Shown in pieces: positions 57,097 through 57,420 of a stretch of 64,000 nucleotides of DNA. The first letter of the stretch is position 1. The number at the start of each line of letters is the position of its first letter. A program made the position numbers and the translations under genes. The stretch is from Ostrea edulis. Its lineage: Eukaryota. The stretch is taken from NCBI RefSeq assembly GCF_947568905.1, contig NC_079165.1:15004001-15068000 (forward strand), written 5' to 3'. The notes beneath the pieces were generated by a model that saw only the letters and a program-made list of their open reading frames with translations, was not told the DNA's origin and searched no databases.

Positions 57097-57420
57097 TTAT
57101 GGACTGTTAGTCCCCGAGGGTCTCTACAGCCCAGTAGCTAAGTACTTCGTTACTAGCTTGAAAATACGGATGTATATTTAATTGCTGTTATAAAATTTAG
57201 AAATTCATTTCAAAATTAAGGATTATCTCCCTCATGCATAGCTTTTATCCTTGGACGAATTTGGCTCCACTTGTTTGGCACGCTGTTTTTGGCTATATTT
57301 AGATCTAAAACTTCATAGTTATTTCGGATTTCAAACATTTCGGTTGAGCATCACTGAAGAGACATTATTTGTCGAAATGCGCATCTGGTGCATCAAAATT
57401 GGTACCGTATAAGTTTTACA
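57097..57420 (+). mobile_element. Probable Penelope-like element terminal repeat (pLTR) remnant carrying the hammerhead
   Basis: About 320-bp block ending just after the hammerhead. Minimal hammerheads are established components of PLE terminal repeats. Boundaries approximate. Confidence 0.6.
57344..57396 (+). ncRNA. Minimal type I hammerhead ribozyme (PLE-type)
   Basis: Stem I TTGAGCATCA/TGGTGC(A)TCAA, core CTGAAGA (57354-57360), stem II GAC-ATTATTT-GTC, GAAA (57374-57377), palindromic stem III ATGCGCAT, and AUC cleavage triplet ending at C57385. Confidence 0.88.

What the first reader, a model, noticed from the sequence alone, without database searches (positions are those of the whole stretch)
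57344..57396. Intact minimal hammerhead ribozyme with a palindromic stem III, upstream of MCT-C
Seen: every canonical element is present. These are a 10-bp stem I with one bulge (TTGAGCATCA/TGGTGCATCAA), CUGAAGA, a 3-bp stem II (GAC/GUC), GAAA, a self-complementary AUGCGCAU stem III and an AUC cleavage site after 57385. Established: minimal type I hammerheads with palindromic stem III occur in Penelope-like element terminal repeats and cleave best as dimers. Inference: this is a pLTR remnant that could cleave any + strand transcript crossing it. It lies about 6.8 kb upstream of the MCT-C ATG, on the opposite strand. None of the roughly 20 PLE 3' fragments in the window carries it, so it may belong to a different PLE family or to the other end of the element.
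Basis: partly seen in the sequence, partly recalled or inferred. Interest (0 to 1): 0.72.

Follow-up and report, generated by a model that had tools for sequence, protein, structure and literature searches.

The report
Oyster hammerhead retrozyme, solitary copy
The hammerhead self-cutting RNA motif is really there, but it belongs to one ordinary, very young copy of a 351-base non-coding jumping repeat (an animal "retrozyme") that has over 7,000 copies in this oyster-like genome, a kind of element already described in mussels, corals and salamanders.

Summary
Observation confirmed. Window 57344-57396 (+) carries every hammerhead (HHR) element. A structure descriptor finds this one hit in the window, against 0.003 expected by chance.

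Corrections:
- Helix II is 4 bp (GACA/UGUC), not 3.
- With 6 bp before the bulge in helix I, 4 bp in helix II, and 2 bp plus a 4-nt palindromic loop in helix III, this is the canonical metazoan type I design, not the PLE "min-HHR".
- Rfam does not detect it. Rfam also misses the two PLE hammerheads at 53.2-53.4 kb.

Interpretation partly supported. The motif is not a pLTR remnant. It lies in 57100-57424, a copy of an ORF-less 351-bp unit that lacks the unit's first 26 nt and differs from the family consensus at 2 of 324 positions.
- The genome holds 7,275 exact copies of the 32-nt core and 1,535 head-to-tail pairs about 351 bp apart.
- Arrays have a fixed 3' end 35-39 nt past the cut site and variable 5' truncation, which is Penelope-like insertion.
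- Sampled autonomous PLEs carry other hammerheads.

In silico, the monomer prefers an inactive fold. Two copies form the double hammerhead through the AUGCGCAU palindrome, so a lone copy is probably a poor self-cleaver.

The scan has already reported this family on other DNA of this genome (s1-292085, s1-268693, s1-311804 and others). It is a new member of a known kind, of low interest.

The parts
57100..57424 (+). One solitary copy of the 351-bp retrozyme unit (unit positions 351, 1-324). It lacks the 26-nt segment TTATGACCCCTGGGTCGAGGCCTCTGCTGG that joins units in arrays, so it is 5'-truncated by 26 nt. It is non-coding.
   Evidence: The BLAST extent is the same in 30 loci. The linker is conserved at internal junctions. 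The copy differs from the family consensus at 2 of 324 positions, 57244 and 57421. The longest open stretch in a trimer is 56 codons.
57344..57396 (+). Type I hammerhead ribozyme motif, identical to the family consensus.
57344..57353 (+). Helix I, 5' strand (positions 2.10-2.1).
   Evidence: Direct reading. It pairs with 57386-57396: 6 bp, a bulged A at 57392, then 4 bp.
57354..57360 (+). Catalytic core C3-U4-G5-A6-A7-G8-A9 (CUGAAGA).
57361..57373 (+). Helix II hairpin: GACA, loop UUAUU, UGUC (4 bp, with G10.1-C11.1 at its base).
   Evidence: the descriptor counted 4 pairs.
57374..57376 (+). Core G12-A13-A14.
57377..57384 (+). Helix III element AUGCGCAU. In a monomer it forms 2 bp plus a GCGC loop. 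Between two copies it forms an 8-bp helix.
   Evidence: Cofold of two 53-nt motifs and the MFE of a 422-nt two-unit transcript both pair the two palindromes with each other.
57385..57386 (+). Predicted self-cleavage site: C17 at 57385, with the cut between 57385 and 57386.
   Evidence: Follows from hammerhead numbering applied. Cleavage itself was not tested.
57386..57396 (+). Helix I, 3' strand (positions 1.1-1.11).
57415..57424 (+). Fixed 3' end of the element (...AAGTTTTACAT), 35-39 nt past the cut site. This is the presumed start point of reverse transcription.
   Evidence: In 28 of 30 loci the array ends at unit position 320-324; the other two (L006, L017) align to 326-328.

Best explanation
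Window 57100-57424 is a young, solitary, slightly 5'-truncated insertion of an ORF-less 351-bp retroelement of the animal 'non-LTR retrozyme' kind, i.e. a non-autonomous rider of Penelope-like elements. Its + strand carries a canonical metazoan type I hammerhead.

Shown here:
- The motif is present and is the family consensus.
- The family is very abundant and young.
- Units form short head-to-tail arrays with a fixed 3' end and variable 5' truncation.
- There is no ORF.
- Autonomous PLEs with related hammerheads fill the genome.

Inferred mechanism:
1. Arrays are transcribed into multimeric RNA.
2. Hammerheads of adjacent units, or of two RNAs, pair through the AUGCGCAU palindrome into a double hammerhead.
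3. Each cuts after C17, releasing 351-nt monomers. A tRNA ligase may close these into circles.
4. A PLE reverse transcriptase starts copying at a fixed internal site about 35-39 nt past the cut, on an RNA longer than one unit (a circle or an uncut multimer), and stops at variable points.

This lone copy has only one hammerhead, so it is expected to cut poorly unless a second family RNA pairs with it. Nothing indicates a role for the neighbouring gene.
For: - Motif and chance test.
- Copy number: 7,275 exact cores and 1,535 pairs about 351 bp apart.
- Identity of the best copies is 96-100%. The window copy is 2 of 324 positions from consensus.
- Unit limits, conserved 26-nt linker, fixed 3' end and variable 5' ends.
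- Complex inverted/tandem arrangement in L009, as described for PLEs (PMC8557442).
- No ORF. GC is 38.7%.
- The dimer MFE is the double hammerhead: -33.9 kcal/mol against 2 x -11.1. The MFE of a two-unit transcript pairs the two palindromes and completes one hammerhead.
- PLEs are abundant: 1,102 GIY-YIG candidates. They carry hammerheads with palindromic helix III and an unrelated but complementary helix I.
- Literature: mussel retrozymes have about 5,000 copies in 350-390 bp repeats that make circRNAs (PMC7229834). A short palindromic helix III implies dimer action (PMC4209133). Retrozymes derive from PLE pLTRs (bioRxiv 10.64898/2026.07.22.740005).
Against:
- Rfam hammerhead models give no hit.
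- The predicted 351-nt circle is no more stable than shuffles (z = +0.13, 56% paired), unlike the highly self-paired retrozyme circles in the literature.
- None of the sampled arrays begins at the cleavage site, and the 3' end is not at the cleavage site. Hammerhead cutting has therefore left no direct trace in the DNA copies.
- Target-site duplications could not be shown: 5 of 28 arrays have a junction match of 7 nt or more, against 9% in the null.
- No partner PLE sharing the 3' end was found among 35 sampled PLE loci.
- Copies are too alike for a covariation test within the family.
Confidence: 0.82

Rival explanations
1. One reading: the stretch is a remnant of a pseudo-LTR of an autonomous, ORF-bearing Penelope-like element, either of another family or from the other end of the element.
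For: The hammerhead design is shared with PLE pLTRs, and the insertion style is PLE-like. Two sampled PLE loci have a unit copy within a few kb: L066, 2.1 kb downstream of a 968-aa ORF, and L038. Retrozymes are reported to be related to pLTRs.
Against: - In 30 of 30 loci the homology stops at 57100 and 57424 and units repeat at 351 bp with no ORF between.
- There are 1,535 adjacent pairs at about 351 bp.
- The sampled PLE families carry different hammerheads directly downstream of their ORFs.
- With at least 7,275 copies in 895 Mb, two or three chance neighbours in about 150 kb of PLE loci are expected.
- The L038 copy is on the opposite strand to the ORF.
Confidence: 0.06
2. The hammerhead is an inherited passenger. 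The element is mobilised as an ordinary linear transcript started from an internal promoter, and ribozyme cutting and RNA circles play no part in its spread.
For: - 5' ends of arrays cluster at window-equivalent 57320-57345, just 5' of the hammerhead and 22-47 nt downstream of a TATATTTA at 57298. Nine of 29 fall in one 26-nt span (scan-statistic P = 0.015) and four fall within 3 nt (P = 0.03).
- No sampled array starts at the cut site.
- The predicted circle is not unusually structured.
- PLE min-HHRs cleave poorly in vitro (PMC4209133).
- Naiad PLEs thrive without hammerheads (PMC8557442).
Against: - The intact hammerhead is the consensus of both the young family and the older 81%-identity subfamily. 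There the motif keeps 49 of 53 positions, while the whole unit aligned at about 81% identity.
- Per-site divergence is 1.5% in the motif against 2.3% elsewhere.
- Mussel elements of similar size and copy number do make abundant circRNAs.
- Arrays longer than one unit need a multimeric or circular template either way.
Confidence: 0.2
3. It is a plain satellite DNA with a hammerhead, spread by DNA-level mechanisms (unequal exchange, rolling-circle DNA amplification) and not by reverse transcription.
For: It has tandem organisation and a 351-bp period like the newt and Schistosoma hammerhead satellites.
Against: There are thousands of short arrays (about 0.9 to 3.5 units in the sample) dispersed on all ten large contigs in both orientations. 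Nearly all end at the same nucleotide and are 5'-truncated at different points. This is the footprint of target-primed reverse transcription.
Confidence: 0.03
4. It is a chance resemblance to a hammerhead in AT-rich DNA.
For: There is no Rfam hit. The loose core pattern alone is not enriched in the window: 16 matches against 9.6 expected.
Against: The full descriptor is expected 0.003 times per window. The motif is the consensus of a family of over 7,000 copies. The same architecture recurs, with different complementary helices, in the genome's PLE families. Rfam also misses those PLE motifs.
Confidence: 0.01

Closest known systems
Non-LTR retrozymes of animals (Cervera & de la Pena, NAR 2020, PMC7229834), especially the Mytilus galloprovincialis family
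   Same: ORF-less, low-GC tandem unit of about 350 bp with one type I hammerhead per unit. It has thousands of copies in a bivalve genome and co-occurs with autonomous PLEs that carry atypical hammerheads.
   Different: No expression or circRNA data were obtained here. The predicted circle is not highly self-paired. Helix III is only 2 bp with a palindromic loop, so dimer action is expected, as in amphibian retrozymes and unlike the efficient monomers of most invertebrate retrozymes. Sequence homology to the mussel element was not tested here.
Newt satellite 2 / axolotl retrozyme hammerheads, which act as a double hammerhead (Forster et al. 1988, as cited in PMC4209133 and PMC7229834)
   Same: Type I hammerhead in a repeat of about 330-350 bp. 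Helix III is too short for monomer activity and extends through its palindrome when two copies pair.
   Different: The host is a mollusc and the sequence is unrelated. Activity is untested here.
min-HHRs in PLE pseudo-LTRs (Cervera & de la Pena, MBE 2014, PMC4209133)
   Same: Type I, palindromic helix III, located near the 3' end of a PLE-style insertion. Real examples lie in the same window at 53208-53246 (+) and 53349-53395 (-).
   Different: PLE min-HHRs have helix I of 4-5 bp, a long helix II (6-8 bp) with an unpaired 5' nucleotide, and no helix III loop. The 57344 motif has the canonical 6 bp / 4 bp / 2 bp plus 4-nt loop layout, and it does not flank an ORF.
Rfam Hammerhead_1 (RF00163) and other Rfam hammerhead families
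   Same: Same catalytic core and three-helix junction, by direct reading.
   Different: No match at gathering score or at E<=10.

Membership tests
Hammerhead ribozyme (core definition) | Conserved core C3 U4 G5 A6 N7 G8 A9, G12 A13 A14, the A15.1-U16.1 pair, and H17 (not G) at the cut site | tested here: met
   CUGAAGA at 57354-60, GAA at 57374-76, A57377 and U57384, C57385.
Hammerhead ribozyme (core definition) | Three helices around the core in type I order (helix I open, helices II and III closed) | tested here: met
   Helix I has 6 + 4 bp with a bulged A. Helix II has 4 bp. Helix III has 2 bp in the monomer or 8 bp in the dimer.
Hammerhead ribozyme (core definition) | Site-specific self-cleavage | not testable with these tools
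   This needs in vitro transcription or RNA end mapping.
Rfam hammerhead families (Hammerhead_1 and others) | Covariance-model score at or above the gathering threshold | tested here: not met
   No hammerhead hit at gathering score or at E<=10. Control: the two PLE hammerheads at 53.2-53.4 kb are also not reported, so these models miss this class.
Animal non-LTR retrozyme | Type I hammerhead inside short (150-450 bp) head-to-tail repeats present in many copies | tested here: met
   The unit is 351 bp, with 7,275 exact cores and 1,535 adjacent pairs. The window copy itself is solitary.
Animal non-LTR retrozyme | No ORF, no LTR/PBS/PPT, GC below 50% | tested here: met
   The longest open stretch in a trimer is 56 codons. 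GC is 38.7%. Nothing is conserved outside the unit. PBS and PPT were not searched for specifically.
Animal non-LTR retrozyme | Target-site duplications, when present, longer than 4 bp | tested here: inconclusive
   Some junctions show 7-8 nt repeats (L019 AAATTAC, L010, L014), but overall this is not above the shuffled-pair null.
Animal non-LTR retrozyme | Unit-length linear and circular RNAs expressed | not testable with these tools
Animal non-LTR retrozyme | circRNA predicted to be stable and highly self-paired | tested here: not met
   Circular MFE is -72.5 kcal/mol against a shuffle mean of -73.1 (z = +0.13), with 56% of bases paired.
Animal non-LTR retrozyme | Co-occurrence with autonomous PLEs that carry hammerheads | tested here: met
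   1,102 GIY-YIG candidates and ORFs of up to 968 aa. PLE hammerheads sit downstream of those ORFs.
PLE pseudo-LTR | Direct or inverted repeat flanking an RT + GIY-YIG ORF | tested here: not met
   There is no ORF and no homology beyond the unit in 30 loci with 1.5-kb flanks. The period is 351 bp.
PLE pseudo-LTR | 5'-truncated upstream copy, partial tandem or inverted arrangement, fixed 3' end | tested here: met
   (including L009 with inverted copies). This feature is shared with non-autonomous PLE riders.
PLE min-HHR (2014 descriptor) | Short helix I (4-5 bp), long helix II with an unpaired 5' nucleotide, no helix III loop | tested here: not met
   The motif has the canonical 6 / 4 / 2+4 layout. 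The 53349-53395 (-) motif does fit the min-HHR description.

The most novel reading that the evidence does not exclude
The family may not spread through hammerhead-made circles. Array 5' ends pile up at window-equivalent 57320-57345, just downstream of a TATA-like box and just upstream of the hammerhead, and none of the sampled arrays starts at the cut site. This would fit a linear transcript from an internal promoter as the transposition template. In that case the dimer-only hammerhead would serve as something else, such as an RT recognition or regulatory element, or as a brake that keeps monomers uncut.
Probability: 0.15. Interest if true: 0.45.

Novelty: new member of a known kind. Interest (0 to 1): 0.2.

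Why it matters
It matters little for this locus. It is one of thousands of near-identical copies, it is solitary, and nothing ties it to the neighbouring gene. At family level it adds an oyster example to the animal retrozymes and has three useful properties. The family is very young and abundant, so it is probably still active. Its hammerhead is predicted to work only as a dimer. It sits in a genome where several autonomous PLE families with different hammerheads can be compared, which could help identify which PLE mobilises retrozymes and whether the template is a circle. For annotation, these copies should be masked as one TE family and not scored as separate ribozyme genes. Rfam-based screens will miss them.

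Tried and rejected
- **Rfam:** cmscan at gathering score and at E<=10 gave no hammerhead. A control on the PLE hammerheads at 53.1-53.5 kb was also blank, so Rfam is uninformative here.
- **Monomer fold:** the single-strand MFE of the monomer is not a hammerhead (z = -0.58). This was explained later by the dimer folds.
- **Loose core pattern:** it is not enriched in the window, so I replaced it with a full descriptor.
- **Partner PLE:** BLAST of the unit against 35 GIY-YIG loci found only 2-3 incidental copies. No PLE with the same hammerhead or 3' end turned up.
- **Older subfamily:** No between-subfamily covariation test was possible, and I did not work around the limit.
- **Target-site duplications:** not distinguishable from the null.
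- **Rod-like circle:** not supported.
- **MCT-C claim:** Pfam scans of the ORF at 50149-50583 (-) and of other nearby ORFs gave nothing.
- **Promoter/terminator scan:** it is bacterial-type and uninformative here.
- **HDV-like ribozyme at the unit start:** considered by eye and dropped. GGACUGUUAGUCC is a simple local hairpin.
- **tRNA:** ARAGORN does not confirm the weak Rfam tRNA hit at 60150-60221.

Full report
**1. The observation**

The + strand at 57344-57396 reads TTGAGCATCA CTGAAGA GACA TTATT TGTC GAA ATGCGCAT C TGGTGCATCAA. In hammerhead numbering this gives:
- Helix I: A-U, C-G, U-G, A-U, C-G, G-C, then a bulged A at 57392, then four more pairs.
- Core C3-A9.
- A 4-bp helix II with G10.1-C11.1 at its base and a 5-nt loop.
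- G12-A13-A14.
- A15.1 to U16.1 within the palindrome AUGCGCAU.
- C17 at 57385, so the cut is predicted between 57385 and 57386.

A loose core pattern alone is not enriched in the window (16 matches against 9.6 expected). A full descriptor that demands all three helices finds only this site on both strands, against a mean of 0.003 hits per simulated window.

Rfam gives no hammerhead match at gathering score or at E<=10 on 57000-57700. It is equally blind to the two Penelope-type hammerheads at 53.2-53.4 kb. That negative result therefore says little.

**2. What the motif sits in**

A search of the window's own genome (895 Mb, ten large contigs) with 57097-57420 returned 42 scored matches. The 40 full-length ones are 96-100% identical, out of 375 first-look candidates. 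BLAST of the surroundings against 29 of those loci shows that the homology always stops at 57100 and 57420-57424.

In many loci units follow each other head to tail. They are joined by a conserved 26-nt segment, TTATGACCCCTGGGTCGAGGCCTCTGCTGG, which the window copy lacks. The full unit is therefore 351 bp, and the window holds unit positions 351 and 1-324. It is a solitary copy truncated by 26 nt at its 5' end.

In 28 of the 30 loci the array ends at unit position 320-324 (...AAGTTTTACAT), 35-39 nt past the cut site; the arrays in L006 and L017 align to 326-328. The 5' ends vary, giving arrays of about 0.9 to 3.5 units. L009 shows inverted plus tandem copies.

Genome-wide counts and unit properties:
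- The exact 32-nt core occurs 7,275 times, with 0 for the reversed control.
- 1,535 pairs of hammerhead 3' halves lie about 351 bp apart.
- The unit has no ORF; the longest open stretch is 56 codons in a trimer.
- GC content is 38.7%.
- The window copy differs from the consensus of 76 aligned copies at two positions and has the consensus hammerhead.
- An older subfamily of about 370 bp at 81-85% identity is also abundant, with 3,999 first-look candidates.

**3. Relation to Penelope-like elements (PLE)**

GIY-YIG matches are very numerous: 1,102 candidates, many in open frames of 787-973 aa, some in 3,717-bp tandems or inverted pairs.

A scan of 35 such loci for CUGANGA...GAAA plus a palindromic helix III did not impose helix I pairing. 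It found several hammerhead types, GAA-AGCGCU-H in four versions, whose flanks nevertheless pair: ACUGU/ACAGU, ACUGC/GCAGU, GAAGCUU/AAGCUUU, UAACGC/GCGUUA. A second scan added GAA-AAUU-U with UUGUC/GACAA, a 6-bp helix II and an unpaired A before it. That is the 'min-HHR' of PLE pLTRs described in 2014 (PMC4209133).

Both of the abundant types occur in the window as short 5'-truncated PLE tails set against (TA)n:
- 53203-53281 (+), which is 98.75% identical to the 787-aa family.
- 53323-53420 (-).

None of the sampled PLE loci has the 57344-type hammerhead as its own tail. The unit copies near L066 and L038 are 2.1 kb from the ORF or on the other strand, and at this copy density they are expected by chance.

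The 57344 motif has the layout that the 2014 paper calls the canonical metazoan type I: helix I of 6 bp, helix II of 4 bp, and helix III of 1-2 bp capped by a 2-4 nt palindromic loop. That design is stated to be inactive as a monomer and active as a dimer when copies are in tandem.

**4. How it most likely works**

Folding results:
- For the 53-nt motif alone, the hammerhead fold costs -4.8 kcal/mol against an MFE of -11.1. The MFE uses a competing hairpin between the palindrome and the helix I 3' strand.
- Two copies co-fold at -33.9 kcal/mol into exactly the domain-swapped double hammerhead, with an 8-bp helix III.
- In a 422-nt transcript spanning two adjacent units, the unconstrained MFE (-100.1 kcal/mol) pairs the two palindromes and completes one of the two hammerheads.

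The best-supported model is that of animal retrozymes (PMC7229834):
1. Arrays are transcribed into multimeric RNA.
2. Paired hammerheads cut that RNA to unit length.
3. The monomers may be circularised by a tRNA ligase.
4. A PLE reverse transcriptase copies an RNA longer than one unit from a fixed internal start.

The DNA anatomy is shown here. RNA processing, circles and the identity of the reverse transcriptase are inferred.

Points against a simple reading:
- The predicted circle is no more structured than shuffles (z = +0.13).
- No sampled array starts at the cut site.
- Array 5' ends cluster at window-equivalent 57320-57345. Nine of 29 fall in one 26-nt span (P = 0.015) and four fall within 3 nt (P = 0.03). 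This lies downstream of a TATATTTA at 57298 and could mark a transcription start or a reverse-transcriptase stop.
- Target-site duplications were not demonstrable.

The lone window copy has a single hammerhead and is predicted to be a poor self-cleaver unless another family RNA pairs with it.

**5. Selection on the motif**

Copies are too similar for covariation within the family.
- Per-site divergence from consensus is 1.5% in the motif (54 of 3,606) against 2.3% elsewhere (361 of 15,802).
- In the older subfamily copy the motif keeps 49 of 53 positions, while the whole unit aligned at about 81% identity. Other blocks of the unit are equally conserved.
- Support for the structure comes mainly from the unrelated but complementary helix I sequences of the genome's other PLE-linked hammerheads.

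**6. Surroundings**

No Pfam family matches the ORF whose ATG lies at 50583 (-), even at E<=10. The 'MCT-C' label is therefore unverified here.

The 90-aa ORF at 57331-57603 (-) overlaps the motif, runs out of the repeat and has no family. I take it for chance.

Its origin was not tested.

**7. Comparison, novelty, limits**

The element meets most defining features of non-LTR retrozymes and fails the pLTR test because it flanks no ORF. It is closest to the mussel family in size, copy number and host class. It is closest to the amphibian retrozymes in its need for a dimer.

A full-text search for hammerhead ribozyme + oyster + retrozyme found only the Naiad paper and its preprint, which does not describe this family.

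This scan has already reported the same family on other DNA of this genome many times. I checked one such place (s1-292085) and found it to be the same unit at 94-98% identity, with the same hammerhead.

The finding is therefore a new member of a known kind and an ordinary copy.

Noticed in passing
window 53203-53281 (+): An 80-bp 5'-truncated tail, 98.75% identical to a young PLE family (787-aa ORF, 3,717-bp tandem units in L062). It carries that family's min-HHR (UAACGC CUGAGGA ... GAA AGCGCU U GCGUUA) and ends against a (TA)n tract.
   Followed up: partly
window 53323-53420 (-): The tail of a second abundant PLE family, with a textbook min-HHR: UUGUC CUGAAGA, an unpaired A, a 6-bp helix II GGGACG/CGUCCC, GAA AAUU U GACAA. 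It is set against (AT)n. The same motif lies about 0.8-1.1 kb downstream of GIY-YIG in 17 sampled loci. This is the subject of scan note s1-307081.
   Followed up: partly
window 58480-58545, and 24 further matches (e.g. 6996-7061, 34369-34444, 47171-47240, 51739-51811): A very common ~66-bp repeat (AAAAGGTGAAGAAAATGAACAGTGATCAATCTCGTAACTCC...). It also forms a 50-bp-period array at 37519-37805 and recurs in the flanks of many retrozyme loci. It carries no hammerhead.
   Followed up: partly
unit-equivalent window 57320-57345 (arrays in L003, L005, L012, L016, L006, L024, L025, L014, L026): The 5' ends of retrozyme arrays cluster just upstream of the hammerhead, 22-47 nt downstream of a TATATTTA at 57298. 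Nine of 29 arrays fall in one 26-nt span (P = 0.015). This could be a transcription start or a reverse-transcriptase stop.
   Followed up: partly
L007 1888-2176: One retrozyme copy is split inside helix I of its hammerhead by a ~290-bp insertion of another element, flanked by a 5-bp CTGGT duplication.
   Followed up: no
window 60150-60221 (+): A weak Rfam tRNA match (32.4 bits, just over the gathering score of 29) that ARAGORN does not call. It is probably a tRNA-derived repeat or pseudogene.
   Followed up: partly
window 60807-60944: A 32-bp tandem repeat, 4.3 copies, 93% matches (TCTCGTAATGCGTACTGGGCGTTCAGGATCGG).
   Followed up: no
L062 (G000:C1:110500500-110510499) and other places listed: The 787-aa PLE family occurs as head-to-tail tandems of 3,717 bp and as close inverted pairs with identical GIY-YIG scores. 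This suggests very recent activity.
   Followed up: no
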